Of a stretch of DNA of 64,000 nt, positions 1-53,496 are shown in pieces; position 1 is the first letter of the stretch; every line of letters begins with the position of its first letter. The position numbers and the translations under genes are program-made. This DNA comes from Mobula birostris (lineage: Eukaryota), in contig NC_092382.1 of assembly GCF_030028105.1 (NCBI RefSeq), positions 100,704,699 through 100,768,698 on the forward strand, in the 5' to 3' direction. The notes below the pieces were generated by a model, which worked only from the letters and a program-made list of their open reading frames with translations, had not been told where the DNA came from and did no database searches.

Positions 1-3000
1 CCCTGGTCCTAGACTCCAACACTACAAGAAACTTCCTCTCAATATCCACTGAATGTGTGACCTCTGGTGCTAGAATCCCCCCACTACAGGAAATATCCTC
101 TCCACATCCACTGTATCAAGCACCCTGGTCCTGGACTCCCCCACTACAGGAAACATCCTCTCAACACCACTCTATCTGTGTCCTCTGGTCCTAGACTCCC
201 ACACTAGAGGAAACATACTATTCATATCCACTCTATCTGTGTCCTCTGGTCCTAGACTCCCCCATTAGTGGAAAAATCCTCTCCACATCCACTCTATCTG
301 TGTCCCTGGTCCTGGACTCCCCCTCTGCAGGAAACTTCCCCTCCATATCCACTATATCTGTGTCCTCTGGTCCTAGACTCCCCACACTACAGGAATCATC
401 CTCTCCACATCCACTCTATCTGTGCCCTCTGGTCCTAGACTTCCCCCACTGTAGGAAACATCCTCTCCACATCCACTATATCTGTGTCCTCTGGTCCTAG
501 ACTCTACCACTACAGGAAACATCCTCTCCGTATCCACTCTATCTGTGTCCTCCGGACCTAGACTCCCCCACTACAAGAAACATCCACTCTATCTCTGTCC
601 TCTGGTCCTAGACACCCACACTATATGAAACATCCTCTCCACATCCACTCTATCTATGTCCTCTGGACCCAGTCTCCCGTAATATAGGAAATATCCTCCC
701 CTCATCCACTCTATCTGTGTCCTCTGGTCCTAGTCTCCGCAACTATAGGAATCATCCTCTACATATGCACTCTATCTGTGTCCTCTGGTCCTAGTCTCCC
801 CCACTATAGGAAACGTCCTCTCCATATCCACTCTATCTTTGTCCTCTGGTCCTAGACTCCCCCATTACAGGAAACAGCCTCTCCATATCCACTCTATCTG
901 TGTCCCTGGTCCTAGGTTACCTCACTACAGGAAACATCCTCTCCAAATCCACTCTATCTGTGTCCTCTGGTCCTAGACTCCCCACAGTACAGGAAACTTC
1001 CTCTCCACATCCACTCCATCTGTGTCCTCTGGTCATAGACTCCCCCCACTACAGGAAACATCCTCTCCACATCCATTCAATCTGTGTGCTCTGGTCCCAG
1101 AGACCCCACTATAGGATATATCCTCTCCACATCCACTCTATCTGTCTCCTCTGGTCCTAGACTCTCCCACTACAGGAAACATTTCCACATCCAGTCTATC
1201 TGTGACCTCAGGTCCTAGACTCCCCCCAACTACAGGAAACATCCTCTCCACAGTCACTCTATCTATGTCCTCTGGTCCTAGACTTTCCCCAATATAGGAA
1301 AAATCCTGTCCATATCCACTCTATCTCTGTCCTATGGTCCTAGACTCTCCCACTACAGGAAACATCCTCTCCATATCCACGCTATCTGTGTCCTCTGGTC
1401 CTAGACTCCCCGACTATAGGAAACATCCTCTTCATATCCACTCTGTCTGTGTCCTCTGGTCCTAGTCTCCCACAGTATAGGAATCATCCTCTCCACATCC
1501 ACTCTAGCTGTGCCCTCTGGTCCCAGACTTTCCCCACTGTAGGAAACATCCTCTCCACATCCACTATATCTGTGTCCTCTGGTCCTAGACTCTACCACTA
1601 CAGAAAACATCCTCTCCGTATCCACTCTATCTGTGGTCTCTGGTCCTAGACTCCCCCACAATCGGAAACATCCTCTCCACATCCACTCTATCTGTGACCT
1701 CTGGTCCTAGACTCACCCCACTACAAGAAACATCCTCGCCACATCAACACGGGTCCTAGACTCCACCCACTACAGGAAACATCCTCTCCACATCCACTCT
1801 ATCTGTGTCCTCTGGTCCTTGACTTTCCCCACTATAGGAAAAGTCCTCTCCATATCCAATCTATCTCTGTGCTGTGGTCCTAGACTCTCCCACTACAGGA
1901 AACATCCTCTCCATATCCACTCTATCTGTGTCCTCTGGTCCTAGACTCCCCGACTATTGGAAACATCCCCTTCATATCCACTCTGTCTGTGTCCTCTGGT
2001 CCTAGTCTCCCACACTATAGGAAACGTCCTCTCCATATCCACTCTATCTGTTTCCTCTATTCCTAGACTCCCCCATTACAGGAAACATCCTCTCCACATC
2101 CTCTCTATCTGTGTCCCTGGTCCTAGACTCACCCCACTTCAGGAAACATCCTCTCCACATGCACTCTGTCTGTGTCCTCTGGTCCTAGACTCCCCCAGTA
2201 CAGGAAACATCCTCTGCACATCCATTCTATCTGTGTCCACTGGTCTTAGACTCCCCGACTACAGGAAACATCCCCTCCACATCCACTCTATCTGTGTCCC
2301 TGGTCCTAGACTACCCCACTACTGGTAACATCCTCTCCCTATCCACTCTATCTGTGTCCTCTGGTCCTGGACTCCCCCATTAGTGGAAACATCCTCTCCA
2401 CATCCACTCCATCTGTGCCCTCTGGTCCTAGACTCCCCCACTAGAGGAAACATCCTCTCCATATGCACTCTATTTGTGTCCTCTGGTCCTAGACTCCGCC
2501 ATTGCAGGAAACATCCTCACCACATACACTCTATTTGTGTCCTCTGGTCCTAGACTCCCCAAATACAGGAAACATCCTCTCCATATCCACTCTATCTGTG
2601 TCCTCTAATCCTAGACTCCCCGATTACAGGAAACATCCTCACCAAATCCACTCTGTCTGTGTCCTCTGGTCCTAGACACCCACTCTATCGGAAACATCCT
2701 CTCCACATCCACTCTATCTGTGTCCTCTGGACCCAGTCTCCCCTAATATAGGAAACATCCTCCCCTCATCCACTCTATCTGTGTCCTCTGGTCCTAGTCT
2801 CCGCAACTATAGGAAACATCCTCTACATATGCACTCTATCTGTGTCCTCTGGTCCTAGTCTCCCCCACTATAGGAAACATCCTCTCCATATCCACTCTAT
2901 CTGTGTCCCTGGTCCTAGGCTACCTCACTACAGGAAACATCCTCTCCATTTCCATTCTATCTGTGTCCTCTGGTCCTAGACTCCCCCATTACACGAAACA

Positions 3001-6000
3001 TCCTCTCCACATCCACTCTATCTCTGCCCTCTGGTCCTAGACTCCCCCAATACAGGAAACATCCGCACCACATCAACTCTATCTGTGTCCTCAGTCCTAG
3101 TCTCCCCATTACAGGAAACATCCACTCCATATCCACTCTATTTGTGTCCTCTGGTCCCAGACTCCCCCATTACAGGGAACATCCTCTCCAAATCCACTCT
3201 ATGTGTGTCCTCTAGTCCTAGACTCCCCACAGTACAGGAAACTTCCTCTCCACATCCACACTATCTGTGTGCTCTGGTCCCAGAGACCCCACTATAGGAT
3301 ATATCCTCTGCACATCCACTCTATCTGTCTCCTCTGGTCCTAGACTCTCCCACTACAGGAAACATCTCCACATCCACTCTATCTGTGACCTCAGGTCCTA
3401 GACTCCCCCCACTACAGGAAACATCCTCTCCACATTCAGTCTATCTGTGTCCTCAGATGCTAGACTCCCCCCACTACAGGAAACATCCTCTCCACTGTCA
3501 CTCTATCTATGTCCTCTGGTCCTAGACTTTCCCCACTATAGGAAACATCCTGTCCATTACCACTCTATCTCTGTCCTATGGTCCTAGACTCTCCCACTAC
3601 AGGAAACATCCTCTCCATATCCACGCTATCTGTGTCCTCTGGTCCTAGACTCCCCGACTATAGGAAACATCCTCTTCATATCCACTCTGTCTGTGTCCTC
3701 TGGTCCTAGTCTCCCACAGTATAGGAATCATCCTCTCCACATCCACTCTAGCTGTGCCCTCTGGTCCCAGACTTTCCCCACTGCAGGAAACAACCTCTCC
3801 ACATCCACTATATCTGTGTCCTCTGGTCCTAGACTCTACCACTACAGGAAACATCCTCTCCGTATCCACTCTATCTGTGTTCTCTGGTCCTAGACTCCCC
3901 CACAATAGGAACCATCCTCTCCACATCCACTCTATCTGTGACCTCTGGTCCTAGACTCACCCCACTACAAGAAACATCCTCGCCACATCAACACGGGTCC
4001 TAGACTCCACCCACTACAGGAAACATCCTCTCCACATCCACTCTACCTGTGTCCTCTGGTCCTTGACTTTCCCCACTATAGGAAAAGTCCTCTCCATATC
4101 GACTCTATCTCTGTCCTGTGGTCCTAGACTCTCCCACTACAGGAAACATCCTCTCCACATCCACTCCATCGGTGTCATCTAGTCCAAGACTGCCCCACTA
4201 CAGGAAACATCCTCTACACATCCACTCTATCTGTGTCCTCTGGTCCTAGACTCCCCGACTATTGGAAACATCCTCTTCATATCCACTCTGTCTGTGTCCT
4301 CTGGTCCTAGTCTCCCACACTATAGGAAACGTCCTCTCCATATCCACTCTATCTGTGTCCTCTGTTCCTAGACTCCCCCATTACAGGAAACAACCTCTCC
4401 ACATCCTCTCTATCTGTGTTCCTGGTCTAGACTACCCCACTACAGGAAACATCCTCTCCATATCCACTCTATCTGTGCCCTCTGGTCCTATTCTCCCCCA
4501 CTAGAGGAAACATCCTCTCCATATCTACTCTATCTGTGTCCTCTGGTCCTAGACTCCCCCACTATAGGAAACATCCGCTCCATATCCATTGTATCTGTGT
4601 CCTTTGGTCCTAGACGTCACCATTACAGGAAACATCCTCTCCATATCCACTCTATCTGTGTCCTCTGGTCCCAGTCTCCCCCAATATAGGAAATATCCTC
4701 TCCAAATCACTCTATCTGTGTCCTCTGGTCCTAGTCTCCGCAACTGTAGGAAACATCCTCTCCATATCCACTCTGTCTGTGTCCTCTGATCCTAGTCTTC
4801 CCCACTATATGAAACGTCCTCTCCATATCCACTCTATCTCTGTCCTCTGGTCCAAGACTCCTCCATTACAGGAAACAACCTCTTCACTTCCACTCTATCT
4901 GTGTCCCTGGTCCTAGACTGCCACACTACAGGAAACTTCCTCTCCATACCCACTGAATGTGTGTCCTCTGGTCCTAGATTTTCCCCACTATAGGAAACAT
5001 CCTGTCCATATCCACTCTATCTCTGTCCTATGGTCCAAGACCCTTGCACTACAGGAAACATCCTCTCCACATCCACTCCATCTGTGTCCACTAGTCCAAG
5101 ACCCTCCCACTACAGGAAACATCATCTCCATATCCACTCTATCTTTGTCTTCTGGTCCTAGACTCCCCCACTATAGGAAACATCCTCTTCATATCCACTC
5201 TACCGGTGTCCTCTGGTCCTAGTCTTCCCCACTACAGGAAACATCTTCTCCACATCCACTCTATCTGTGTCCCCTGGTCCTAGACTACCCCCACTACAGG
5301 AAATATCCTCTCCACATCCACTCATTCTGTGCACCCTGGTCCCAGACTGCCCCCAGTACAGGAAACATCTTCTCCACATGTACTCAATCTGTGTCCTCTG
5401 GTCGTAGACTCCCCCCACTTCAGGAAACATCCTCTCCACATTGACTCTCTCCGTGTCCTCTGGTCCTAGACTCCCCCAGTACAGGAAACATCCTCTGCAC
5501 ATCCATTCTATCTGTGTCCACTGGTCCTAGACTCCCCGAATACAGGAAACATCCCCTCCACATCCACTCTATCTGTGTCCCTGGTACTAGACTACACCAC
5601 AACAGGTAACATCCTCTCCCTATCCACTCTGTCTGTGTCCTCTGGCCCTAGACTCCCCCATTACAGGAAACATCCTCTCCATATCCACTCTATCTGTGTC
5701 CTCTGGTCCTAGACTCCCCCATTACAGGAAACATCCTCACCACATCCACTCGATCTGTGTCCTCTGGTCCAAGACTCCCCCACTACAGGAAACATCCTCT
5801 CCACATCCACTCTATCTGTGTCCTCTGGTCCTAGACTCCCCCACGACAGGAAACATCCTCTCCACATCCACTCTACCTGTGTCCTCTGGTCCTAGACTTC
5901 CCCCACTGTATGAGACATCCTCTCCACATCCACTCTATCAGTGTCCTCTGGTCCTAGTCTCCGCAAATATAGGAAACATCCTCTACATATGCACTCTATC

Positions 6001-12000: not shown

Positions 12001-15000
12001 ACATCCTCTCCATATCCACTCTATCTGTGTCCTCTGGTCCCAGTCTCCCCTAATATAGGAAACATACACTCCACATCCACTCTATCTGTGTCCTCTGGTC
12101 CTAGTCTCACCCAATATAGGAAACATCCTCTCCAAATCACTCTATCTGTGTCCTCTGGTCCTAGTCTTCCCCACTATAGGAAACGTCCTCTCCATATCCA
12201 CTCTATCTGTGTCCTCTGGTCCTAGACTACTCCATTACAGGAAACATCCTCTCCACATCCACTCTATCTGAGTCCCTGGTCCTAGACTCCAACACTACAA
12301 GACACTTCCTCTCCATATCCACTGAATGTGTGACCTCTGGTCCTAGACTCCCCCCACTACAGGAAACATCCTGTCCACATCCAGTCTATCTGTGTCCTCT
12401 GGTCCTAGACTCCCCCAATACAGGAAACATCCTCTCCACATCCACCTTATCTGTGTCCTCTGGCCCTAGACACCCCCACTACAGGATACATCCTCTCCAC
12501 ATCCACTCTATCTATGTACTCTGGTCTTAGACTTTCCCCACTACAGGAAACATCCTCTCCACATCCACTCCATCTGTGACCAACTAATCCAAGACCCCAC
12601 CACTACAGGAAACATCCTCTCCATACCCACTCTATCTTTGTCCCCTGGTCCGAGACTCCCCCACTATAGGAAACATCCTCTTCATATCCACCCTACTTGT
12701 GTCCTCTGGTCCTGGTCTTCCCCATTACAGGAAACATCCCCTCCACATCCACTCTATCTGTGTCCCTGGTTCTAAACTACCCCACTACAGGAAACATCCT
12801 CTCCATATCCACTCTATCTGTGTCGTCTGGTCCTAGACTCCCCCATTAGTGGAAAAATCCTCTCCACATCCACTCTATCTGTGTCCCTGGTCCTGGACTC
12901 CCCCACTACAGGAAACTTCCTCTCCACATCCACTCTATCTGTGCCCTCTGGTCCTAGAGTTCCCCCACTGTAGGAAACATCCTCTCCACATCCACTATAT
13001 CTGTGTCCTCTGGTCCTAGACTCTACCACTACAGGAAACATCCTCTCCGTATCCACTCTATCTGTGTCCTCTGGTCCTAGAGTCCCCCAGTACAGGAAAC
13101 ATCCACTCTATCTGTGTCCTCTGGTCCTAGACTTCCCCCACTGTAGGAGACATCCTCTCCACATCCACTCTATCCGTGTCCTCTGGTCCTAGACACCCAC
13201 ACTATAGGAAACATCCTCTCCATATCCACTCTATCTGTGTCCTCTGGTCCTAGTCTCCGCAACTATAGGAAACATCCTCTACATATGCACTCTATCTGTG
13301 TCCTCTGGTACTAGTCTCCCCCACTACAGGAAACGTCCTCTCCATATCCACTCTATCTGTGTCCTCTGGTCCTAGAGTCCCCCACTATAGGAAACATCCT
13401 CTCCATATCCACTCTCTCTGTGTCATCTGGTCCTAGACTCCCCCATTAAAGGAAACATCCTCTCCACATCCACTCTCTCTGTGTCCTCTGGTCCTAGTCT
13501 CCCCCACTATAGGAAACGTCCTCTCCATATCCACTCTATCTGTGTCCTCTGGTCCTAGACTCCCCCATTAAAGGAAACATCCTCTCCACTTCCACTTTAT
13601 CTGTGTCCCTGGTCCAAGACTACCCCACTACAGGAAACATCCACTCCATATCCACTCTATCTGTGTCCTCTGGTCCTAGACTCCCCCATTACAGGAAACA
13701 TCCTCTCCACATCCACTCTATCTCTGCCCTCATGTCCTAGACTCCCCCGCTAGAGGAAACATCCTCTCCATATCCACTCTATCTGTGTCCTCCGGTCCTA
13801 GACTCCCCCATTACAGGAAACATTCTCTCCATATCCACTCGATCTGTTTCCTCTGTTCCTAGACTCCCCCATTACAGGAAACATCCTCTCCACATCCACT
13901 CTATCTGTGTCCCTGGGCCTAGACTCCCCCACTACAGGAAACATCCACTCTATCTGTGTCTTCTGGTCCTAGACTTCACCCACTGTAGGAAACATCCTCT
14001 CCACATCCACTGTATCTGTGTCCTATGTTCCTAGACTCTACCACTACAGGAAACATCCTCTCCACATCCACTATATCTGTGTCCTCTGGTGCTAGAGCCA
14101 CACACTATAGGAAACATCCTCTCCGCATTCACTCTCTCTGTGTCCTCTGGTCCGAGACCCCCCTCCCCCACACTAAGGGAAACATCCTCTCCATATCCAC
14201 TCTATCTGTGTCCTCTGGTCCTAGTCTCCCCCACTATAGGAAACATCCTCTCCATATCCACTCTATCTGTGTCCGCTGATCGCAGTCTCCCCCAATATAG
14301 GAAACTTCCTCTTCATATACACTCTATCTGTGTCCTCCGGTCCTAGACTCCCCCTACTACAGGAAACATCCCCTCCACATCCACTCTATCTGTGTCCTCT
14401 GGTCCTAGACTTCCCACACTGTAGGAAACAGCCTCTCCACTTCCACTGTATCTGTGTCCTCTGGTCCCAGACTCTGCCACGACAGGAAACATCCTTTCCA
14501 TATCCACTCTATCTGTGTCCTCTGGTCCTAGTCTCCCCCACTATAGGAAACATCCTCTCCATATCCACTCTATCTGTGTCCGCTGATCCCAGTCTCCCCC
14601 AATATAGGAAACTTCCTCTTCATATGCACTCTATCTGTGCCCTCTGGTCCTAGACTCCCCCTACTACAGGAAACATCCCCTCCACATCCACTCTATCTGT
14701 GTCCTCTGGTCCTAGACTTCCCACACTGTAGGAAACAGCCTCTCCACTTCCACTGTATCTGTGTCCTCTGGTCCCAGACTCTGCCACGACAGGAAACATC
14801 CTTTCCATATCCACTCTATCTGTATCCTCTGGTCCTAGACTCCCCCAGAATAGGAAACATCCTCTCCACATTCACTCTATCTGTGTCCTCTGGTCCGAGA
14901 GTCTGCCACTATAGGAAACATCCTCTCCTTATCCACTCTATCTGTGTCCTCTGGTCCTAGACTCCTCCATTACAGGAAACATCCTCTCCATATCCACTCT

Positions 15001-18000
15001 ATCTGTGTCCTCTGGTCCTAGACTCCCCCATAACAGGAAACATCCTCTCCACATCCACTCGATCTGTGTCCTCTGGTCCTAGACTCCCCCATTGCAGGAA
15101 ATATCCTCTCCAAATCCACTCTATCTTTGTCCCTGGTCCTAGGCTCCCCCACTACAGGAAACATCCACTCTATCTGTGTCTTCTGGTCCTAGACTTCACC
15201 CACTGTAGGAAACATCCTCTCCACATCCACTGTATCTGTGTCCTATGTTCCTAGACTCTACCACTACAGGAAACATAGTCTCCACATCCACTATATCTGT
15301 GTCCTCTGGTGCTAGAGCCACACACTATAGGAAACATCCTCTCCGCATTCACTCTCTCTGTGTCCTCTGGTCCGAGACCCCCCTCCCTCACACTACCGGA
15401 AACATCCTCTCCATATCCACTCTATCTGTGTCCTCTGGTCCTAGACTCCCCCATTACAGAAAACATCCTCTTCATTTTCACTCCATCTGTGTCCTCTGGT
15501 CCTGGTCTCCCCCACTACACTACAGGAAACATCCTCTCCATATCCACTCTATCTGTGTCCTCTGGTCCTGGACTCCCCCATTACAGGAAACATGCTCTCC
15601 ACATCCACTCTCTCTGTGTCCTCTGGTCCTTGACTCCCCCATTACAGGAAACATCTTCTCCACATCCACTCTATCTGTGTCCTCTGGTCCTAGTCTCCCG
15701 CACTATAGGAAACGTCCTCTCCATATCCACTCTATCTGTGTCCTCTGGTCCTAGACTCCCATTAAAGGAAACATCCTCTCCACATCCACTTTATCTGTGT
15801 CCCTGGTCCTAGACTACCCCACTACAGGAAACATACTCTCCATATCCACTCTATCTGTGTCCTCTGGTCCTAGTCTCCCCCGCTATAGGAAACGTACTCT
15901 CCATATCCACTCTATCTGTATCCTCTTGTCCTAGACTCCCCCCACTACAGGAAACATCCTCTCCACATCCACTCTATCTGTGTCCTCTGGTCCTAGACTC
16001 GCCCACTACAGGACACATCCTCTCCACATCCACTCTATCTGTGTCCTCTGGTCCTAGACTCCCCCACTAGAGGATACATCCTCTCCACATCCACTCTATC
16101 TGTGTCCTCTGGTCCTAGACTCCCCCACTAGAGGATACATCCTCTCCACATCCACTCTATCTGTGTCCTCTGGTCCTAGACTCCCCCCACTTCAGGAAAC
16201 ATCCTCTCCACATGCACTCTATCTGTGTCCTCTGTTCCTAGACTCCCATTAAAGGAAACATCCTCTCCACATCCACTTTATCTGTGTCCCTGGTCCTAGA
16301 CTACCCCACTACAGGAAACATCCTCTCCACATCTACTCTATCTGTGTCCTCTGGACATAGATTACCCCCACTGCAGGAAACATCTCCTCCACATCCAGTC
16401 TATCTGTGTCCTCTGGCTTTAGACTCCCCCCACTACAGGAAACATCCTCTCCACATTTGCTCTATCTGTGTCCTCTGGTCCTACACTTTCCCCACTATAG
16501 GAAACGTCTTTTCCATATCCACTCTATCTTCTGTCCTATGGTCCTAGACTCTCACACTGCAGGATACATCCTCTGCATATCCAGTCTATCTGTATCCTCT
16601 TTTCCTAGACTCCCCCCACTACAGGAAACATCCTCTCCATATCCACTCCATCTGTGTCCTCTGGTCCTAGACTCCCCCATTACAGGAAACATCCTCTGCA
16701 CTTCCACTCTATCTGTGTCCTCTGGTCCTAGACTCCCCACTATCGGAAGCATCCTCTCCATATCCTCTCTATCTCTGTCCTCTTGTCCTAGACTCACCCA
16801 TCACAGGAAACATCCTCTCCACATCCACTCTATCTGTGTCCTCTGGTCCTAGTCTTCCCCACTATAGGAAGCGACCTCTCCATATCCACTCTATCTGTGT
16901 CCTCTGGTCCTAGACTCCCCAAATACTGGAAACATCCTCTCCACATCCACTTTATCTGTGTCCCTGGTCCAAGACTACCCCACTACAGGAAACATCCACT
17001 CCATATCCACTCTATCTGTGTCCTCTGGTCCTAGACTCCCCCATTACAGGAAACATCCTCTCCACATCAACTCTATCTCTGCCCTCATGTCCTAGACTCC
17101 CCCGCTAGAGGAAACATCCTCTCCATATCCACTCTATCTGTGTCCTCCGGTCCTAGACTCCCCCATTACAGGAAACATTGTCTCCATATCCACTCGATCT
17201 GTTTCCTCTGTTCCTAGACTCCCCCATTACAGGAAACATCCTCTCCACATCCACTCTATCTGTGTCCCTGGGCCTAGACTCCCCCACTACAGGAAACATC
17301 CACTCTATCTGTGTCTTCTGGTCCTAGACTTCACCCACTGTAGGAAACATCCTCTCCACATCCACTGTATCTGTGTCCTATGTTCCTAGACTCTACCACT
17401 ACAGGAAACATCCTCTCCACATCCACTCTATCTGTGTCCTCTGGTCCTAGACTCACCCATTACAGGAAACATCCTCTGCACTTCCACTCTATCTGTGTCC
17501 TCTGGTCCTAGACTCCCCACTATCGGAAGCATCCTCTCCATATCCTCTCTATCTGTGTCCTCTGGTCCTAGACTCACCCATCACAGGAAACATCCTCTCC
17601 ACATCCACTCTATCTGTGTCCTCTGGTCCTAGTCTTCCCCACTATAGGAAGCGACCTCTCCATATCCACTCTATCTGTGTCCTCTGGTCCTAGACTCCCC
17701 AAATACTGGAAACTTCCTCTCCACATCCACTTTATCTGTGTCCCTGGTCCAAGACTACCCCACTACAGGAAACATCCACTCCATATCCACTCTATCTGTG
17801 TCCTCTGGTCCTAGACTCCCCCATTACAGGAAACATCCTCTCCACATCCACTCTATCTCTGCCCTCATGTCCTAGACACCCCCGCTAGAGGAAACATCCT
17901 CTCCATATCCACTCTATCTGTGTCCTCCGGTCCTAGACTCCCCCATTACAGGAAACATTGTCTCCATATCCACTCGATCTGTTTCCTCTGTTCCTAGACT

Positions 18001-21000
18001 CCCCCATTACAGGAAACATCCTCTCCACATCCACTCTATCTGTGTCCCTGGGCCTAGACTCCCCCACTACAGGAAACATCCACTCTATCTGTGTCTTCTG
18101 GTCCTAGACTTCACCCACTGTAGGAAACATCCTCTCCACATCCACTGTATCTGTGTCCTATGTTCCTAGACTCTACCACTACAGGAAACATCCTCTCCAC
18201 ATCCACTCTATCTGTGTCCTCTGGTCCTAGACTCACCCATTACAGGAAACATCCTCTGCACTTCCACTCTATCTGGGTCCTCTGGTCCTAGACTCCCCAC
18301 TATCGGAAGCATCCACTCCATATCCTCTCTATCTGTGTCCTCTGGTCCTAGACTCACCCATCACAGGAAACATCCTCTCCACATCCACTCTATCTGTGTC
18401 CTCTGGTCCTAGTCTTCCCCACTATAGGAAGCGACCTCTCCATATCCACTCTATCTGTGTCCTCTGGTCCTAGACTCCCCAAATACTGGAAACTTCCTCT
18501 CCACATCCACTTTATCTGTGTCCCTGGTCCAAGACTACCCCACTACAGGAAACATCCACTCCATATCCACTCTATCTGTGTCCTCTGGTCCTAGACTCCC
18601 CCATTACAGGAAACATTCTCTCCATATCCACTCGATCTGTTTCCTCTGTTCCTAGACTCCCCCATTACAGGAAACATCCTCTCCACATCCACTCTATCTG
18701 TGCCCTCATGTCCTAGACTCCCCCGCTAGAGGAAACATCCTCTCCATATCCACTCTATCTGTGTCCTCCGGTCCTAGACTCCCCCATTACAGGAAACATT
18801 CTCTCCATATCCACTCGATCTGTTTCCTCTGTTCCTAGACTCCCCCATTACAGGAAACATCCTCTCCACATCCACTCTATCTGTGTCCCTGGGCCTAGAC
18901 TCCCCCACTACAGGAAACATCCACTCTATCTGTGTCTTCTGGTCCTAGACTTCACCCACTGTAGGAAACATCCTCTCCACATCCACTGTATCTGTGTCCT
19001 ATCTTCCTAGACTCTACCACTACAGGAAACATCCTCTCCACATCCACTATATCTGTGTCCTCTGGTGCTAGAGCCACACACTATAGGAAACATCCTCTCC
19101 GCATTCACTCTCTCTGTGTCCTCTGGTCCGAGACCCCCCTCCCCCACACTAAAGGAAACATCCTCTCCATATCCACTCTATCTGTGTCCTCTGGTCCTAG
19201 ACTACCCCACTACAGGAAACATCCTCTCCACATCTACTCTATCTGTGTCCTCTGGACATAGATTTCCCCCACTACAGGAAACATCTTCTCCACATCCAGT
19301 CTATCTGTGTCCTCTGGCTTTAGACTCCCCCTACTACAGGAAACATCCTCTCCACATTTGCTCTATCTGTGTCCTCTGGTCCTACACTTTCCCCACTATA
19401 GGAAACGTCTTTTCCATATCCACTCTATCTTCTGTCCTATGGTCCTAGACTCTCACACTGCAGGATACATCCTCTGCATATCCAGTCTATCTGTATCCTC
19501 TTTTCCTAGACTCCCCCCACTACAGGAAACATCCTCTCCATATCCACTCCATCTGTGTCCTCTGGTCCTAGACTCCCCCATTACAGGAAACATCCTCTCC
19601 ACATCCACTCTATCTCTGCCCTCATGTCCTAGACTCCCCCGCTAGAGGAAACATCCTCTCCATATCCACTCTATCTGTGTCCTCCGGTCCTAGACTCCCC
19701 CATTACAGGAAACATTCTCTCCATATCCACTCGATCTGTTTCCTCTGTTCCTAGACTCCCCCATTACAGGAAACATCCTCTCCACATCCACTCTATCTGT
19801 GTCCCTGGGCCTAGACTCCCCCACTACAGGAAACATCCACTCTATCTGTGTCTTCTGGTCCTAGACTTCACCCACTGTAGGAAACATCCTCTCCACATCC
19901 ACTGTATCTGTGTCCTATGTTCCTAGACTCTACCACTACAGGAAACATCCTCTCCACATCCACTATATCTGTGTCCTCTGGTGCTAGAGCCACACACTAT
20001 AGGAAACATCCTCTCCGCATTCACTCTCTCTGTGTCCTCTGGTCCGAGACCCCCCTCCCCCACACTAAGGGAAACATCCTCTCCATATCCACTCTATCTG
20101 TGTCCTCTGGTCCTAGTCTCCCCCACTATAGGAAACATCCTCTCCATATCCACTCTATCTGTGTCCGCTGATCGCAGTATCCCCCAATATAGGAAACTTC
20201 CTCTTCATATACACTCTATCTGTGTCCTCCGGTCCTAGACTCCCCCTACTACAGGAAACATCCCCTCCACATCCACTCTATCTGTGTCCTCTGGTCCTAG
20301 ACTTCCCACACTGTAGGAAACAGCCTCTCCACTTCCACTGTATCTGTGTCCTCTGGTCCCAGACTCTGCCACGACAGGAAACATCCTTTCCATATCCACT
20401 CTATCTGTGTCCTCTGGTCCTAGACTCCCCAAATACTGGAAACTTCCTCTCCACATCCACTTTATCTGTGTCCCTGGTCCAAGACTACCCCACTACAGGA
20501 AACATCCACTCCATATCCACTCTATCTGTGTCCTCTGGTCCTAGACTCCCCCATTACAGGAAACATCCTCTCCACATCCACTCTATCTCTGCCCTCATGT
20601 CCTAGACACCCCCGCTAGAGGAAACATCCTCTCCATATCCACTCTATCTGTGTCCTCCGGTCCTAGACTCCCCCATTACAGGAAACATTGTCTCCATATC
20701 CACTCGATCTGTTTCCTCTGTTCCTAGACTCCCCCATTACAGGAAACATCCTCTCCACATCCACTCTATCTGTGTCCCTGGGCCTAGACTCCCCCACTAC
20801 AGGAAACATCCACTCTATCTGTGTCTTCTGGTCCTAGACTTCACCCACTGTAGGAAACATCCTCTCCACATCCACTGTATCTGTGTCCTATGTTCCTAGA
20901 CTCTACCACTACAGGAAACATCCTCTCCACATCCACTCTATCTGTGTCCTCTGGTCCTAGACTCACCCATTACAGGAAACATCCTCTGCACTTCCACTCT

Positions 21001-24000
21001 ATCTGTGTCCTCTGGTCCTAGACTCCCCACTATCGGAAGCATCCACTCCATATCCTCTCTATCTGTGTCCTCTGGTCCTAGACTCACCCATCACAGGAAA
21101 CATCCTCTCCACATCCACTCTATCTGTGTCCTCTGGTCCTAGTCTTCCCCACTATAGGAAGCGACCTCTCCATATCCACTCTATCTGTGTCCTCTGGTCC
21201 TAGACTCCCCAAATACTGGAAACTTCCTCTCCACATCCACTTTATCTGTGTCCCTGGTCCAAGACTACCCCACTACAGGAAACATCCACTCCATATCCAC
21301 TCTATCTGTGTCCTCTGGTCCTAGACTCCCCCATTACAGGAAACATTCTCTCCATATCCACTCGATCTGTTTCCTCTGTTCCTAGACTCCCCCATTACAG
21401 GAAACATCCTCTCCACATCCACTCTATCTGTGCCCTCATGTCCTAGACTCCCCCGCTAGAGGAAACATCCTCTCCATATCCACTCTATCTGTGTCCTCCG
21501 GTCCTAGACTCCCCCATTACAGGAAACATTCTCTCCATATCCACTCGATCTGTTTCCTCTGTTCCTAGACTCCCCCATTACAGGAAACATCCTCTCCACA
21601 TCCACTCTATCTGTGTCCCTGGGCCTAGACTCCCCCACTACAGGAAACATCCACTCTATCTGTGTCTTCTGGTCCTAGACTTCACCCACTGTAGGAAACA
21701 TCCTCTCCACATCCACTGTATCTGTGTCCTATCTTCCTAGACTCTACCACTACAGGAAACATCCTCTCCACATCCACTATATCTGTGTCCTCTGGTGCTA
21801 GAGCCACACACTATAGGAAACATCCTCTCCGCATTCACTCTCTCTGTGTCCTCTGGTCCGAGACCCCCCTCCCCCACACTAAAGGAAACATCCTCTCCAT
21901 ATCCACTCTATCTGTGTCCTCTGGTCCTAGACTCCCCCCACTTCAGGAAACATCCTCTCCACATGCACTCTATCTGTGTCCTCTGTTCCTAGACTCCCAT
22001 TAAAGGAAACATCCTCTCCACATCCACTTTATCTGTGTCCCTGGTCCTAGACTACCCCACTACAGGAAACATCCTCTCCACATCTACTCTATCTGTGTCC
22101 TCTGGACATAGATTTCCCCCACTACAGGAAACATCTTCTCCACATCCAGTCTATCTGTGTCCTCTGGCTTTAGACTCCCCCTACTACAGGAAACATCCTC
22201 TCCACATTTGCTCTATCTGTGTCCTCTGGTCCTACACTTTCCCCACTATAGGAAACGTCTTTTCCATATCCACTCTATCTTCTGTCCTATGGTCCTAGAC
22301 TCTCACACTGCAGGATACATCCTCTGCATATCCAGTCTATCTGTATCCTCTTTTCCTAGACTCCCCCCACTACAGGAAACATCCTCTCCATATCCACTCC
22401 ATCTGTGTCCTCTGGTCCTAGACTCCCCCATTACAGGAAACATCCTCTCCACATCCACTCTATCTCTGCCCTCATGTCCTAGACTCCCCCGCTAGAGGAA
22501 ACATCCTCTCCATATCCACTCTATCTGTGTCCTCCGGTCCTAGACTCCCCCATTACAGGAAACATTCTCTCCATATCCACTCGATCTGTTTCCTCTGTTC
22601 CTAGACTCCCCCATTACAGGAAACATCCTCTCCACATCCACTCTATCTGTGTCCCTGGGCCTAGACTCCCCCACTACAGGAAACATCCACTCTATCTGTG
22701 TCTTCTGGTCCTAGACTTCACCCACTGTAGGAAACATCCTCTCCACATCCACTGTATCTGTGTCCTATGTTCCTAGACTCTACCACTACAGGAAACATCC
22801 TCTCCACATCCACTATATCTGTGTCCTCTGGTGCTAGAGCCACACACTATAGGAAACATCCTCTCCGCATTCACTCTCTCTGTGTCCTCTGGTCCGAGAC
22901 CCCCCTCCCCCACACTAAGGGAAACATCCTCTCCATATCCACTCTATCTGTGTCCTCTGGTCCTAGTCTCCCCCACTATAGGAAACATCCTCTCCATATC
23001 CACTCTATCTGTGTCCGCTGATCGCAGTATCCCCCAATATAGGAAACTTCCTCTTCATATACACTCTATCTGTGTCCTCCGGTCCTAGACTCCCCCTACT
23101 ACAGGAAACATCCCCTCCACATCCACTCTATCTGTGTCCTCTGGTCCTAGACTTCCCACACTGTAGGAAACAGCCTCTCCACTTCCACTGTATCTGTGTC
23201 CTCTGGTCCCAGACTCTGCCACGACAGGAAACATCCTTTCCATATCCACTCTATCTGTGTCCTCTGGTCCTAGTCTCCCCCACTATAGGAAACATCCTCT
23301 CCATATCCACTCTATCTGTGTCCGCTGATCCCAGTCTCCCCCAATATAGGAAACTTCCTCTTCATATGCACTCTATCTGTGCCCTCTGGTCCTAGACTCC
23401 CCCTACTACAGGAAACATCCCCTCCACATCCACTCTATCTGTGTCCTCTGGTCCTAGACTTCCCACACTGTAGGAAACAGCCTCTCCACTTCCACTGTAT
23501 CTGTGTCCTCTGGTCCCAGACTCTGCCACGACAGGAAACATCCTTTCCATATCCACTCTATCTGTATCCTCTGGTCCTAGACTCCCCCAGAATAGGAAAC
23601 ATCCTCTCCACATTCACTCTATCTGTGTCCTCTGGTCCGAGAGTCTGCCACTATAGGAAACATCCTCTCCTTATCCACTCTATCTGTGTCCTCTGGTCCT
23701 AGACTCCTCCATTACAGGAAACATCCTCTCCATATCCACTCTATCTGTGTCCTCTGGTCCTAGACTCCCCCATAACAGGAAACATCCTCTCCACATCCAC
23801 TCGATCTGTGTCCTCTGGTCCTAGACTCCCCCATTGCAGGAAATATCCTCTCCAAATCCACTCTATCTTTGTCCCTGGTCCTAGGCTCCCCCACTACAGG
23901 AAACATCCACTCTATCTGTGTCTTCTGGTCCTAGACTTCACCCACTGTAGGAAACATCCTCTCCACATCCACTGTATCTGTGCCCTATGTTCCTAGACTC

Positions 24001-27000
24001 TACCACTACAGGAAACATCGTCTCCACATCCACTATATCTGTGTCCTCTGGTGCTAGAGCCACACACTATAGGAAACATCCTCTCCGCATTCACTCTCTC
24101 TGTGTCCTCTGGTCCGAGACCCCCCTCCCTCACACTACCGGAAACATCCTCTCCATATCCACTCTATCTGTGTCCTCTGGTCCTAGACTCCCCCATTACA
24201 GAAAACATCCTCTTCATTTTCACTCCATCTGTGTCCTCTGGTCCTGGTCTCCCCCACTACACTACAGGAAACATCCTCTCCATATCCACTCTATCTGTGT
24301 CCTCTGGTCCTGGACTCCCCCATTACAGGAAACATGCTCTCCACATCCACTCTCTCTGTGTCCTCTGGTCCTTGACTCCCCCATTACAGGAAACATCTTC
24401 TCCACATCCACTCTATCTGTGTCCTCTGGTCCTAGTCTCCCGCACTATAGGAAACGTCCTCTCCATATCCACTCTATCTGTGTCCTCTGGTCCTAGACTC
24501 CCATTAAAGGAAACATCCTCTCCACATCCACTTTATCTGTGTCCCTGGTCCTAGACTACCCCACTACAGGAAACATACTCTCCATATCCACTCTATCTGT
24601 GTCCTCTGGTCCTAGTCTCCCCCGCTATAGGAAACGTACTCTCCATATCCACTCTATCTGTATCCTCTTGTCCTAGACTCCCCCCACTACAGGAAACATC
24701 CTCTCCACATCCACTCTATCTGTGTCCTCTGGTCCTAGACTCGCCCACTACAGGACACATCCTCTCCACATCCACTCTATCTGTGTCCTCTGGTCCTAGA
24801 CTCCCCCACTAGAGGATACATCCTCTCCACATCCACTCTATCTGTGTCCTCTGGTCCTAGACTCCCCCACTAGAGGATACATCCTCTCCACATCCACTCT
24901 ATCTGTGTCCTCTGGTCCTAGACTCCCCCCACTTCAGGAAACATCCTCTCCACATGCACTCTATCTGTGTCCTCTGTTCCTAGACTCCCATTAAAGGAAA
25001 CATCCTCTCCACATCCACTTTATCTGTGTCCCTGGTCCTAGACTACCCCACTACAGGAAACATCCTCTCCACATCTACTCTATCTGTGTCCTCTGGACAT
25101 AGATTACCCCCACTGCAGGAAACATCTTCTCCACATCCAGTCTATCTGTGTCCTCTGGCTTTAGACTCCCCCACTACAGGAAACATCCTCTCCACATTTG
25201 CTCTATCTGTGTCCTCTGGTCCTACACTTTCCCCACTATAGGAAACGTCTTTTCCATATCCACTCTATCTTCTGTCCTATGGTCCTAGACTCTCACACTG
25301 CAGGATACATCCTCTGCATATCCAGTCTATCTGTATCCTCTTTTCCTAGACTCCCCCCACTACAGGAAACATCCTCTCCATATCCACTCCATCTGTGTCC
25401 TCTGGTCCTAGACTCCCCCATTACACGAAACATCCTCTGCACTTCCACTCTATCTGTGTCCTCTGGTCCTAGACTCCCCACTATCGGAAGCATCCTCTCC
25501 ATATCCTCTCTATCTGTGTCCTCTTGTCCTAGACTCACCCATCACAGGAAACATCCTCTCCACATCCACTCTATCTGTGTCCTCTGGTCCTAGTCTTCCC
25601 CACTATAGGAAGCGACCTCTCCATATCCACTCTATCTGTGTCCTCTGGTCCTAGACTCCCCAAATACTGGAAACATCCTCTCCACATCCACTTTATCTGT
25701 GTCCCTGGTCCAAGACTACCCCACTACAGGAAACATCCACTCCTCCATGATCCACTCTATCTGTGTCCTCTGGTCCTAGACTCCCCCATTACAGGAAACA
25801 TCCTCTCCACATCCACTCTATCTCTGCCCTCATGTCCTAGACTCCCCCGCTAGAGGAAACATCCTCTCCATATCCACTCTATCTGTGTCCTCCGGTCCTA
25901 GACTCCCCCATTACAGGAAACATTGCCTCCATATCCACTCGATCTGTTTCCTCTGTTCCTAGACTCCCCATTACAGGAAACATCCTCTCCACATCCACTC
26001 TATCTGTGTCCCTGGGCCTAGACTCCCCCAACTACAGGAAACATCCACTCTATCTGTGTCTTCTGGTCCTAGACTTCACCCACTGTAGGAAACATCCTCT
26101 CCACATCCACTGTATCTGTGTCCTATGTTCCTAGACTCTACCACTACAGGAAACATCCTCTCCACATCCACTCTATCTGTGTCCTCTGGTCCTAGACTCA
26201 CCCATTACAGGAAACATCCTCTGCACTTCCACTCTATCTGTGTCCTCTGGTCCTAGACTCCCCACTATCGGAAGCATCCTCTCCATATCCTCTCTATCTG
26301 TGTCCTCTGGTCCTAGACTCACCCATCACAGGAAACATCCTCTCCACATCCACTCTATCTGTGTCCTCTGGTCCTAGTCTTCCCCACTATAGGAAGCGAC
26401 CTCTCCATATCCACTCTATCTGTGTCCTCTGGTCCTAGACTCCCCAAATACTGGAAACTTCCTCTCCACATCCACTTTATCTGTGTCCTGGTCCAAGACT
26501 ACCCCACTACAGAAACATCCACTCCATATCCACTCTATCTGTGTCCTCTGGTCCTAGACTCCCCCATTACAGGAAACATCCTCTCCACATCCCACTCTAT
26601 CTCTGCCCTCATGTCCTAGACACCCCCGCTAGAGGAAACATCCTCTCCATATCCACTCTATCTGTGTCCTCCGGTCCTAGACTCCCCCATTACAGGAAAC
26701 ATTGTCTCCATATCCACTCGATCTGTTTCCTCTGTTCCTAGACTCCCCCCATTACAGGAAACATCCTCTCCACATCCACTCTATCTGTGTCCCTGGGCCT
26801 AGACTCCCCCACTACAGGAAACATCCACTCTATCTGTGTCTTCTGGTCCTAGACTTCACCCACTGTAGGAAACATCCTCTCCACATCCACTGTATCTGTG
26901 TCCTATGTTCCTAGACTCTACCACTACAGGAAACATCCTCTCCACATCCACTCTATCTGTGTCCTCTGGTCCTAGACTCACCCATTACAGGAAACATCCT

Positions 27001-30000
27001 CTGCACTTCCACTCTATCTGTGTCCTCTGGTCCTAGACTCCCCACTATCGGAAGCATCCACTCCATATCCTCTCTATCTGTGTCCTCTGGTCCTAGACTC
27101 ACCCATCACAGGAAACATCCTCTCCACATCCACTCTATCTGTGTCCTCTGGTCCTAGTCTTCCCCACTATAGGAAGCGACCTCTCAATATCCACTCTATC
27201 TGTGTCCTCTGGTCCTAGACTCCCCAAATACTGGAAACTTCCTCTCCACATCCACTTTATCTGTGTCCCTGGTCCAAGACTACCCCACTACAGGAAACAT
27301 CCACTCCATATCCACTCTATCTGTGTCCTCTGGTCCTAGACTCCCCCATTACAGGAAACATCCTCTCCACATCCACTCTATCTGTGCCCTCATGTCCTAG
27401 ACTCCCCCGCTAGAGGAAACATCCTCTCCATATCCACTCTATCTGTGTCCTCCGGTCCTAGACTCCCCCATTACAGGAAACATTCTCTCCATATCCACTC
27501 GATCTGTTTCCTCTGTTCCTAGACTCCCCCATTACAGGAAACATCCTCTCCACATCCACTCTATCTGTGTCCCTGGGCCTAGACTCCCCCACTACAGGAA
27601 ACATCCACTCTATCTGTGTCTTCTGGTCCTTAGGACTTCACCCACTGTAGGAAACATCCTCTCCACATCCACTGTATCTGTGTCCTATCTTCCTAGACTC
27701 TACCACTACAGGAAACATCCTCTCCACATCCACTATATCTGTGTCCTCTGGTGCTAGAGCCACACACTATAGGAAACATCCTCTCCGCATTCACTCTCTC
27801 TGTGTCCTCTGGTCCGAGACCCCCCTCCCCCACACTAAAGGAAACATCCTCTCCATATCCACTCTATCTGTGTCCTCTGGTCCTAGACTCCCCCCCACTT
27901 CAGGAAACATCCTCTCCACATGCACTCTATCTGTGTCCTCTGTTCCTAGACTCCCATTAAAGGAAACATCCTCTCCACATCCACTTTATCTGTGTCCCTG
28001 GTCCTAGACTACCCCACTACAGGAAACATCCTCTCCACATCTACTCTATCTGTGTCCTCTGGACATAGATTTCCCCCACTACAGGAAACATCTTCTCCAC
28101 ATCCAGTCTATCTGTGTCCTCTGGCTTTAGACTCCCCCCACTACAGGAAACATCCTCTCCACATTTGCTCTATCTGTGTCCTCTGGTCCTACACTTTCCC
28201 CACTATAGGAAACGTCTTTTCCATATCCACTCTATCTTCTGTCCTATGGTCCTAGACTCTCACACTGCAGGATACATCCTCTGCATATCCAGTCTATCTG
28301 TATCCTCTTTCCTAGACTCCCCCCACTACAGGAAACATCCTCTCCATATCCACTCCATCTGTGTCCTCTGGTCCTAGACTCCCCCATTACAGGAAACATC
28401 CTCTCCACATCCACTCTATCTCTGCCCTCATGTCCTAGACTCCCCCGCTAGAGGAAACATCCTCTCCATATCCACTCTATCTGTGTCCTCCGGTCCTAGA
28501 CTCCCCCATTACAGGAAACATTCTCTCCATATCCACTCGATCTGTTTCCTCTGTTCCTAGACCTCCCCCATTACAGGAAACATCCTCTCCACATCCACTC
28601 TATCTGTGTCCCTGGGCCTAGACTCCCTCACTACAGGAAACATCCACTCTATCTGTGTCTTCTGGTCCTAGACTTCACCCACTGTAGGAAACATCCTCTC
28701 CACATCCACTGTATCTGTGTCCTATGTTCCTAGACTCTACCACTACAGGGAAACATCCTCTCCACATCCACTATATCTGTGTCCTCTGGTGCTAGAGCAC
28801 ACACTATAGGAAACATCCTCTCCGCATTCACTCTCTCTGTGTCCTCTGGTCCGAGACCCCCCTCCCCCCACACTAAGGAAACATCCTCTCCATATCCACT
28901 CTATCTGTGTCCTCTGGTCCTAGTCTCCCCACTATAGGAAACATCCTCTCCATATCCACTCTATCTGTGTCCGCTGATCGCAGTATCCCCCAATATAGGA
29001 AACTTCCTCTTCATATACACTCTATGTGTCCTCCGGTCCTAGACTCCCCCTACTACAGGAAACATCCCCTCCACATCCACTCTATCTGTGTCCTCTGGTC
29101 CTAGACTTCCCACACTGTAGGAAACAGCCTCTCCACTTCCACTGTATCTGTGTCCTCTGGTCCCAGACTCTGCCACGACAGGAAACATCCTTTCCATATC
29201 CACTCTATCTGTGTCCTCTGGTCCTAGTCTCCCCCACTATAGGAAACATCCTCTCCATATCCACTCTATCTGTGTCCGCTGATCCCAGTCTCCCCCAATA
29301 TAGGAAACTTCCTCTTCATATGCACTCTATCTGTGCCCTCTGGTCCTAGACTCCCCCTACTACAGGAAACATCCCCTCCACATCCACTCTATCTGTGTCC
29401 TCTGGTCCTAGACTTCCCACACTGTAGGAAACAGCCTCTCCACTTCCACTGTATCTGTGTCCTCTGGTCCCAGACTCTGCCACGACAGGAAACATCCTTT
29501 CCATATCCACTCTATCTGTATCCTCTGGTCCTAGACTCCCCCAGAATAGGAAACATCCTCTCCACATTCACTCTATCTGTGTCCTCTGGTCCGAGAGTCT
29601 GCCACTATAGGAAACATCCTCTCCTTATCCACTCTATCTGTGTCCTCTGGTCCTAGACTCCTCCATTACAGGAAACATCCTCTCCATATCCACTCTATCT
29701 GTGTCCTCTGGTCCTAGACTCCCCCATAACAGGAAACATCCTCTCCACATCCACTCGATCTGTGTCCTCTGGTCCTAGACTCCCCCATTGCAGGAAATAT
29801 CCTCTCCAAATCCACTCTATCTTTGTCCCTGGTCCTAGGCTCCCCCACTACAGGAAACATCCACTCTATCTGTGTCTTCTGGTCCTAGACTTCACCCACT
29901 GTAGGAAACATCCTCTCCACATCCACTGTATCTGTGCCCTATGTTCCTAGACTCTACCACTACAGGAAACATCGTCTCCACATCCACTATATCTGTGTCC

Positions 30001-36000: not shown

Positions 36001-36300
36001 CAGTCTATCTGTGTCCTCTGGTCCGAGACTTCCCCCACTACAGGAAACATTCTCTCGACATCCAGTCTATCTGTGTCCTCTGGTCCTAGACTCCCCCCAC
36101 TACAGGAAACATCCTCTCCACATCCACTCTATCTGTGTCCTCTGGTCCTACACTTTCCCCACTATAGGAAACATCTTTTCCATATCCACTCTATCTTCTG
36201 TCCTATGGTCCTAGACTCTCCCACTACAGGAAACATCCTCTCCACATCCACTCTATCTGTGTCCTCTGGTCCTAGACTCCCCTACTATAGGAAATATCCC
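1..36300 (-). repeat. CR1-LINE-derived satellite, 61-bp monomer, about 600 copies, open at the left window edge
   Basis: Plus-strand consensus TGTGTCCTCTGGTCCTAGACTCCCCCACTACAGGAAACATCCTCTCCACATCCACTCTATC repeats head to tail. The minus strand encodes DRVDVERMFPVVGESRTRGH, the CR1 ORF2 C-terminal segment. A single-copy parent inside a CR1 at 48219-48279 matches 53/61. Confidence 0.97.
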
Positions 36301-36889
36301 CTGGAGACTTTTTTTTTTTTTTTGCAAATTGCCCCGGCCTATGCCTCTGGTAGCTCCTTGTATTTGCAGGTCTCCCTCTGAGCAATTGCTCCCCCATCAG
36401 CCCCACCTCGGGTCGCAATGAAATCTCTCTGGCCTCTCACTTTAAATCTGCACCCTCCGGTTCTTGATTCTCCAATCCCGATGGGGTGGGGGTGTGGGTT
36501 GGAGATGGGTGTGTGTGTGTGTGTGGGGGGGGGGAACATTGCGTGTATTCAACGGTTTCACGCTTCCATTAAATATCGGCGAATGCATGCGGTATGCATC
36601 CTGAAATTCTTGCTCGCAACAGACATCCACGAAACACAATTAGAGCCTGAAGGAATGGGTGACAGAAAACGGTCGAAGCCCAAGGTATTCCCGCTATTTG
36701 TACCCCGCCCCCGCCCCCAGAGGCGCTATAAACCTCTGCAAGGCCATCCTTCTTTCTCCGACGCTGCGGTAGGATGAGGCGGCCTCCCCACAACTGCGTA
36801 ATAAGAGGGCATCCTTATCCACCGCCATACGGCTCTGTAATGAATTATCCTGCAGCCGAGGAATTGACGACACCCCCCCCCCCCGTTAG

Positions 36890-46355: not shown

Positions 46356-46397
<42 letters not shown>

Positions 46398-53389: not shown

Positions 53390-53496
53390 CTTGGACTTCA
53401 AAGCGAGCACCGAAACGATGATGGCGTACAGGATACTTTTGCAGATCAGGATGAGGTACGTCAGTCGTCCGGTCCCAATGCTCTGCATCTTTTGCT
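53390..53496 (-). CDS. TRBC: TRBC exon 3 (connecting peptide plus transmembrane)
   Basis: tgtgcag|AG CAA AAG ATG...TCC AAG|gttagg. 107 bp encoding (E)QKMQSIGTGRLTYLILICKSILYAIIVSVLALKSK, with the conserved TM Tyr...Lys...Tyr that mediates CD3 association. Phase 1 to phase 0. Confidence 0.95.

What the first reader, a model, noticed from the sequence alone, without database searches (positions are those of the whole stretch)
1..36300. Satellite of more than 36 kb built from a 61-bp piece of CR1 reverse-transcriptase coding sequence, about 16.6 kb 3' of TRBC
Seen: about 600 head-to-tail monomers whose minus strand reads DRVDVERMFPVVGESRTRGH. Single-copy parents sit inside CR1 remnants in the same window (48219-48279, 53/61 identical; 47825-47884). 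Established: TE-derived satellites exist. Inference: this may be an undescribed CR1-derived satellite family, and its size suggests a subtelomeric or heterochromatic block next to an antigen-receptor locus.
Basis: partly seen in the sequence, partly recalled or inferred. Interest (0 to 1): 0.7.

Follow-up and report, generated by a model that had tools for sequence, protein, structure and literature searches.

The report
LINE-tail-derived 61-bp satellite beside TRBC
A real block of at least 36 kb of non-coding DNA in a manta-type ray is built from about 600 copies of a 61-base piece of a jumping gene (a CR1/L2-type LINE) and lies about 17 kb past the T-cell receptor beta constant gene; this is a clear example of an already well-known way in which satellite DNA arises.

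Summary
Window 1-36299 is one uninterrupted, single-orientation array of 598 monomers of 61 bp. It runs off the window start, so 36.3 kb is a minimum. The minus strand of the consensus reads DRVDVERMFPVVGESRTRGH.

This peptide is a conserved piece of the C-terminal tail of the ORF2 protein of a CR1/L2-type LINE. It lies downstream of the reverse-transcriptase domain, not inside it. The closest copy in the window (48218-48278) matches 53/61. It belongs to the parent family but is not shown to be the parent.

Monomers are old: any two are 84% alike. However, 436 of 598 have an identical twin, because blocks of 0.8-5.2 kb were recently duplicated at 97-99.6% identity. The array holds 277 distinct monomers, so it cannot be an inflated short minisatellite.

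It has no ORF, no Rfam match, no notable fold and no telomere repeats, and its CpG o/e is 0.15.

Satellites derived from LINE ORF2 are already known, for example the chicken CR1/HinfI repeat and L1-derived PROsat. This scan had already noted a 61-bp CR1-derived array of more than 55 kb about 60-115 kb beyond this window, probably the same family.

Verdict: a real new member of a known kind, of modest interest.

The parts
1..36299 (-). Satellite array of 598 monomers of 61 bp, cut off by the window start. LINE-sense reading is on the minus strand.
13623..18862 (.). Largest recent internal duplication. This 5.2-kb block is 99.0% identical to 22365-27606 (lag 8742 bp, 144 monomers).
22365..27606 (.). 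Twin of block 13623-18862.
21235..24259 (.). 3.0-kb block, 98.5% identical to 27189-30213.
2770..5320 (.). 2.6-kb block, 98.7% identical to 7575-10125. It is the only large recent duplication in the distal 13 kb.
36297..36336 (.). Right edge of the array. The last monomer is cut mid-unit and is followed by a short non-repeat stretch and a T-run (an A-run in LINE sense). There is no continuation into a LINE.
48218..48278 (-). Closest single-copy relative of the monomer in the window, 53/61 to the consensus. It lies inside a LINE tail.
48052..48520 (-). ORF2 C-terminal tail of that LINE copy (GLDRVDVERTFPVVGESRTRGHSLR...), with one frameshift near 48317.
48697..49134 (-). Reverse-transcriptase domain (PF00078, E 1.3e-9) of the same LINE copy, upstream of the tail and in the same orientation.
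47825..47884 (+). Second, more distant relative of the monomer (78%), in an older LINE tail on the opposite strand (47473-47953).
57669..58013 (-). TRBC Ig (C1-set) exon, with ...VVCVISGFYPNNIKIRWWVEGREV...
53392..53464 (-). TRBC transmembrane exon core (LTYLILICKSILYAIIVSVLALKSK, followed by a gt donor).

Best explanation
This is a non-coding satellite DNA array. A 61-bp internal piece of the ORF2 C-terminal tail of a CR1/L2-type LINE was duplicated in tandem, presumably by slippage or unequal exchange (inferred). The piece lies about 330-390 bp from the element's 3' end. The tandem copies then expanded into an array, and the monomers drifted apart to about 84% pairwise identity. More recently, unequal crossing-over or segmental duplication of multi-monomer blocks of 0.8-5.2 kb added roughly half of the present length, mostly in the 13-35 kb part nearest TRBC. 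Because 61 is not a multiple of three, the reading frame is lost at every junction, so nothing is encoded. Strong CpG depletion fits long-standing germline methylation. The most likely 'function' is none: it is a neutral or selfish repeat block that happens to lie inside the extended TCR-beta region. Shown here: the array, its LINE homology, its block structure and its position relative to TRBC. Inferred: the order of events, the mechanism of amplification and the chromatin state.
For: Array. LINE homology at DNA level is 53/61. At protein level the monomer peptide matches 17/20 in ORF2 tails from other chondrichthyans, several of which carry PF00078 and one of which NCBI names a jockey-type RT. 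In the window, an RT domain lies upstream of the same tail in the same orientation. LINE copies end without poly(A) in a short 7-nt direct repeat (...CCTATTGTCTATTGTCTAT), as CR1/L2-type elements do. The tail motif is found from chimaera to rays, so the direction is LINE to satellite. Two-phase history: adjacent monomers are 84% identical, the same as any random pair, yet 436/598 monomers have an identical twin at lags of 144, 13, 79 and 98 monomers. Blocks up to 5.2 kb match at 97-99.6%. 26.9 kb has a twin block and 19.6 kb are later copies. Non-coding: the minus strand has stops in every phase, and no homologue was found for a 181-aa plus-strand ORF. There is no Rfam match, the fold z-scores are +1.1 and +1.2, and CpG o/e is 0.15 against 0.58 in the flank. 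Real complexity: 277 distinct monomers and 11748 distinct 31-mers.
Against: No read-level check of the assembly was possible. Neither array edge shows the parent element: the right edge does not continue into a LINE and the left edge is outside the window, so the birthplace is unknown. CR1 versus L2 or Rex1 was not resolved by a tree. Lack of function is an assumption; nothing here tests chromatin, transcription or any effect on TRB rearrangement.
Confidence: 0.85

Rival explanations
1. Assembly inflation: the true locus holds a much shorter array, and the assembler duplicated near-identical blocks.
For: 74% of the array (26.9 kb) has a twin block at least 97% identical elsewhere in the array. 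No read depth could be obtained. All holding runs are low-coverage Logan contigs.
Against: The twin blocks differ by 0.4-2.5%, not 0%. That is more than the error I would expect from long-read consensus, an expectation from general knowledge. After all later copies are removed, about 16.7 kb of distinct sequence and 277 distinct monomers remain. At most this rival would shrink the array; it would not abolish it.
Confidence: 0.08
2. A boundary or architectural element of the TCR-beta locus: arrays of the 61-bp family on both sides of the D-J-C cluster form heterochromatin or insulator blocks that shape V(D)J recombination.
For: The array lies about 17 kb 3' of TRBC. Earlier scan notes, which I did not check, report a 61-bp CR1-derived array of more than 55 kb on the other side of the J-C region and V arrays on both sides.
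Against: There is no evidence of conservation, protein-binding motifs or transcription. The monomers evolve like neutral satellite sequence, with divergence flat along the array. L2/CR1/Rex LINEs make up 12.5-22% of batoid genomes (preprint 10.64898/2026.10.27.761883), so LINE-derived repeats near any locus are expected.
Confidence: 0.05
3. Repeated retrotransposition: the array is a pile-up of severely 5'-truncated LINE copies inserted head to tail.
For: CR1-type LINEs are usually 5'-truncated, and many fragments lie nearby.
Against: Each retrotransposed copy must carry the element's 3' end. The monomer is an internal piece about 330-390 bp upstream of that end and never includes the terminal ...CCTATTGTCTATTGTCTAT motif. 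The unit length is fixed at 61 bp.
Confidence: 0.01

Closest known systems
Chicken HinfI (SCR1) tandem repeat containing CR1 sequence (Li & Leung 2006, as summarised in PMC9659126)
   Same: It is a tandem repeat whose unit carries part of CR1 ORF2, so a CR1-type LINE is the source of a satellite.
   Different: The chicken unit embeds the 3' UTR plus partial ORF2 within a larger unit. Here the unit is only a 61-bp internal coding piece with no 3' UTR, and the host is a ray.
L1 ORF2-derived satellites: PROsat of Phodopus roborovskii and Pvc20 of Phoca (PMC9659126)
   Same: The satellite monomers derive from the ORF2 coding sequence of a LINE.
   Different: They come from a different LINE clade (L1) and from mammals, with different unit sizes.
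The >55-kb 61-bp CR1-derived array noted earlier in this scan (s1-145131, s1-145809), 60-115 kb beyond this window
   Same: Same genome, same scaffold, same unit length and same stated LINE origin. It is probably the same satellite family.
   Different: That array is reported to run seamlessly into a CR1-type element, whereas this one does not do so at its visible edge. I could not read that sequence, so I did not test whether the two are the same family.
Higher-order-repeat satellites such as primate alpha satellite
   Same: Adjacent monomers are diverged, but multi-monomer blocks are nearly identical.
   Different: There is no fixed higher-order period. The lags are irregular (13, 79, 98 and 144 monomers), so these are nested segmental duplications and not a regular HOR.

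Membership tests
Satellite DNA | Long array of head-to-tail monomers in a single orientation | tested here: met
   598 monomers over at least 36.3 kb with constant GC skew
Satellite DNA | Present in the real genome at this size, with read support | tested here: inconclusive
Internal evidence, 277 distinct monomers and a non-redundant core of about 16.7 kb, sets a lower bound.
Satellite DNA | Multiple arrays or high genomic abundance, with heterochromatic location | not testable with these tools
   The only hints are an earlier scan note of a second array and the share of words held by low-coverage runs of coded organisms A-G (0.19-0.43). Those shares fit the multi-copy satellite words.
TE-derived satellite | Monomer homologous to an internal segment of a dispersed transposable element | tested here: met
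   53/61 nt to the LINE tail at 48218-48278, and 17/20 aa to ORF2 tails in the database
TE-derived satellite | The TE is older and more widespread than the array, which gives the direction of derivation | tested here: met
   The tail motif occurs in Mobula, Leucoraja, Pristis, Hypanus, Chiloscyllium and Callorhinchus proteins. At least 15 dispersed copies lie in the window flank.
TE-derived satellite | Array adjoins the parent element at its birthplace | tested here: not met
   The right edge does not continue into LINE sequence, and the left edge is outside the window. This feature is not required for membership.
CR1-clade LINE (the parent element) | Reverse-transcriptase domain in the same ORF2, upstream of the tail | tested here: met
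   PF00078 at 48697-49134(-), and PF00078 in longer database hits
CR1-clade LINE (the parent element) | 3' end without poly(A), ending in a short direct-repeat motif | tested here: met
   Four copies lose similarity right after ...CCTATTGTCTATTGTCTAT (alignment A1). L2 elements share this feature.
CR1-clade LINE (the parent element) | RT phylogeny places it in CR1 rather than L2 or Rex1 | not tested
   No reference LINE library was available. NCBI names one relative 'jockey' RT. My recollection of the chicken CR1 tail motif (RTRGH...NFFT.RVV..WN.LP) is only a lead.
Regular higher-order-repeat satellite | A fixed multi-monomer period along the array | tested here: not met
   Block lags are irregular and no single dominant period appears.
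Subtelomeric satellite | Telomere repeats or a chromosome end nearby | tested here: inconclusive
   The window has no (TTAGGG)3+. Earlier notes imply at least 2.5 Mb of scaffold on one side and at least 0.25 Mb on the other (unchecked).

The most novel reading that the evidence does not exclude
Arrays of the 61-bp LINE-derived satellite bracket the TCR-beta D-J-C recombination centre and are kept there as chromatin boundaries or spacers that influence which V segments can reach it. They would be a satellite co-opted into antigen-receptor locus architecture in cartilaginous fish.
Probability: 0.04. Interest if true: 0.65.

Novelty: new member of a known kind. Interest (0 to 1): 0.27.

Why it matters
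This is a tidy, datable example of a protein-coding piece of a LINE turning into a large satellite in a cartilaginous fish, a group whose satellites are almost undescribed. For annotators it explains why translated searches light up about 600 times here with a LINE ORF2 motif. Its place inside a multi-megabase TCR-beta region matters practically, because arrays like this break assemblies and synteny maps of antigen-receptor loci. It would matter biologically only if the arrays turn out to be conserved around the D-J-C cluster.

Tried and rejected

2. Fetching the satellite from other assemblies:
- A search with a 181-aa plus-strand satellite ORF found nothing.
- A junction-probe scan of JGI metagenome contigs found nothing, which is uninformative.

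3. Finding annotated ray TRBC proteins with the Ig exon found nothing in the allowed length range.

4. Naming the tail: Pfam has no family for it, and the ESM Atlas gave only unnamed chordate clusters.

5. A full-text search for the tail peptide words found nothing relevant.

6. Rfam found no match on the array or the flank. Folding of dimers found no structure.

7. A parent LINE at the right edge is rejected. The only LINE-like piece there (36420-36479, minus strand) belongs to another subfamily (HRFKVRG type) and covers the wrong part of the tail.

8. Tandem retrotransposition is rejected, because the monomer is internal to the element.

9. I looked for a divergence gradient towards the array edge and found none.

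Full report
**Observation**

Tandem Repeats Finder reports a single array at 3-36299 with period 61, 597.6 copies, 82% matches and score 47046. A wrap-around alignment of 1-36296 to the rotated consensus cuts it into 598 monomers. Their lengths are 61 bp (337), 62 (126), 60 (58), 49 (19) and 68 (13). Mean identity to the consensus is 90% and is flat from one end to the other, 0.89-0.92 per 30 monomers.

GC content is about 0.50 and GC skew stays between -0.47 and -0.51 throughout, so the orientation never flips. The array starts before base 1, so 36.3 kb is a minimum. A 27-base probe across the monomer junction occurs 127 times, against none in 100 shuffles. The minus strand of the consensus reads DRVDVERMFPVVGESRTRGH. 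Because 61 = 3 x 20 + 1, the frame shifts at every junction and stops follow.

**What the monomer comes from**

The 27.7-kb flank contains at least 15 fragments of one protein tail (...LRGDLIETYKI.KGLDR.D..R.FP..GESRTRGHSLRIRG..FRTE.RKNFFTQRVV..WN.LP...), found by tblastn.

- At 48052-48520(-) this tail lies downstream of a Pfam RVT_1 domain at 48697-49134(-) and in the same orientation (E 1.3e-9).
- The 61-bp stretch 48218-48278 of that copy matches the monomer consensus 53/61. A second copy at 47884-47825 matches 78%, and others match 72-79% over 40-43 bp.
- A database search with a 204-aa tail from the window (63377-63988, minus strand) found 137 relatives. They include proteins of Mobula hypostoma (87% identity), Leucoraja erinacea, Pristis pectinata (named by NCBI 'RNA-directed DNA polymerase from mobile element jockey'), Hypanus sabinus, Chiloscyllium punctatum and Callorhinchus milii. 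Several carry PF00078.
- In these proteins the monomer peptide is matched at up to 17 of 20 positions.
- Four LINE copies in the window lose similarity to each other right after ...CCTATTGTCTATTGTCTAT, a short direct repeat without poly(A). This is the CR1/L2 type of 3' end.

The source is therefore the ORF2 C-terminal tail of a CR1/L2-type LINE, about 330-390 bp from the element's 3' end and some 400 bp downstream of the RT domain. Calling it 'CR1' rather than L2 or Rex1 rests on my memory of the chicken CR1 tail and was not tested with a tree. The motif is spread across chondrichthyans and the array is local, so the direction is LINE to satellite.

**Anatomy of the array**

Adjacent monomers are 84% identical, exactly the same as any random pair of monomers. 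There is therefore no local homogenisation at the monomer level. Yet 436 of 598 monomers have an identical twin elsewhere, at preferred lags of 144, 13, 79 and 98 monomers. A stringent self-comparison shows why:

| Block | Twin | Size | Identity |
|---|---|---|---|
| 13623-18862 | 22365-27606 | 5.2 kb | 99.0% |
| 21235-24259 | 27189-30213 | 3.0 kb | 98.5% |
| 2770-5320 | 7575-10125 | 2.6 kb | 98.7% |
| 17659-19254 | 20389-21985 | 1.6 kb | 99.6% |

Many smaller block pairs also exist. In all, 26.9 kb has a twin block of at least 500 bp at 97% or more, and 19.6 kb are later copies of an earlier block. That leaves about 16.7 kb of non-redundant satellite with 277 distinct monomer sequences.

The lags are irregular, so this is nested segmental duplication and not a regular higher-order repeat. 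The 49-51-bp variant lacks the stretch between two ACATCC words, as slippage would produce. CpG o/e is 0.15 in the array against 0.58 in the flank. The LINE copy has ACGTCC where the monomer has ACATCC.

**History and mechanism**

The most economical history has four steps:

1. A tandem duplication of the 61-bp segment in a fairly intact LINE copy. The consensus still reads an open 20-residue peptide, and it keeps the M of ERMFP that other tails have but copy 48218 has lost.
2. Early amplification into an array.
3. Long drift, to about 16% pairwise difference.
4. Recent unequal exchanges of 0.8-5.2-kb blocks, concentrated in 13.4-35.5 kb.

These steps are inferred from the pattern and not observed. 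Nothing suggests a product. The plus-strand ORFs (up to 244 aa) have no homologues. Rfam finds nothing. Dimers fold worse than shuffles, with z-scores of +1.1 and +1.2.

**Edges**

The right edge at 36299 cuts a monomer mid-unit. It is followed by a few unrelated bases and a T-run, then unique sequence that does not align to any LINE copy. About 120 bp further on lies a 20-residue LINE-tail fragment of another subfamily, at 36420-36479 on the minus strand. It scores 12/20 against database tails, while 200 shuffles reached at most 9. It covers the wrong part of the tail to be the parent. The left edge is outside the window, so the birthplace is unknown. The nearby copies are relatives, not demonstrated parents.

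**Context**

The C1-set exon at 57669-58013(-) carries the WWV.G.EV motif. From my own knowledge that motif is typical of TCR beta. PDB matches include both Ig and TCR-beta constant domains. A transmembrane exon (LTYLILICKSILYAIIVSVLALKSK|gt) ends near 53392. The exons were examined one by one, and I did not make or search a joined model. The array thus begins about 17 kb 3' of the last coding exon I could place.

Earlier notes of this scan, which I did not check, add the following:
- A TRB J cluster lies 2.2 kb beyond the window end (s1-145725).
- A 61-bp CR1-derived array of more than 55 kb lies 60-115 kb beyond it (s1-145131, s1-145809).
- TRB V arrays lie 0.6-2.5 Mb before and 250 kb beyond the window.

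If these notes are right, the array is inside the extended TRB region and far from a scaffold end. The window itself has no telomere repeats. The scan has therefore probably seen this satellite family before, on neighbouring DNA.

**Reads and other species**

The look-up of sequencing runs on 32300-38300 listed only low-coverage runs kept as Logan contigs, from coded organisms A to I. Shares were 0.43 (A), 0.25 (B) and about 0.20 (C-G). These shares equal the fraction of query words that are multi-copy satellite words: 0.42 for words seen at least 5 times and 0.25 for words seen at least 10 times. The runs may therefore hold the satellite in several related species, but this is an inference.

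**Comparison and novelty**

Satellites derived from transposable elements are well documented. They include a chicken tandem repeat that embeds the CR1 3' UTR and part of ORF2, and L1 ORF2-derived satellites in a hamster and a seal (review PMC9659126). L2/CR1/Rex LINEs make up 12.5-22% of batoid genomes (preprint 10.64898/2026.10.27.761883), so raw material is plentiful. I found no paper describing this satellite or any batoid satellite catalogue in the held library, and I had no Repbase or Dfam.

**Verdict**

This is a real, well-resolved new member of a known kind and of modest interest. The only route to higher interest is a role for the arrays in TRB locus architecture, for which there is currently no evidence.

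Noticed in passing
window 41511-44270: GC-rich 82-bp minisatellite with 34 copies at 82% identity and a three-unit higher order of about 241 bp. It lies between the satellite and TRBC.
   Followed up: no
window 55188-56023 and 62188-62947: Two 70-bp minisatellites, with 12 and 11 copies at 88-89% identity. They are open on the plus strand for 348 and 434 aa and lie either side of the TRBC Ig exon. Only the repeat and about 60 bp before it align between the two, so they look like internal repeats of a dispersed element.
   Followed up: partly
window 36420-36479 (-): Short LINE-tail fragment of another subfamily (GESRTGGCRFKVRGQRDF), in the same orientation as the array and about 120 bp from its edge. 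It scores 12/20 against database tails, with shuffles reaching at most 9.
   Followed up: yes
window 47473-50059: A LINE copy on the minus strand (RT domain plus tail, 3' end near 47965) appears to be inserted into an older opposite-strand LINE tail at 47473-47953.
   Followed up: partly
window 39300-41250: GC-rich (0.58) stretch with relatively high CpG (o/e about 0.72), with long ORFs on both strands but no Pfam match. It could be a CpG island or an unrecognised element downstream of TRBC.
   Followed up: partly
window 37617-38979: (TATC)n microsatellites around two runs of N at 38343-38625 and 38834-38979.
   Followed up: no
window 46356-46978: Long imperfect (AG)n tract of about 620 bp next to LINE fragments.
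   Followed up: no
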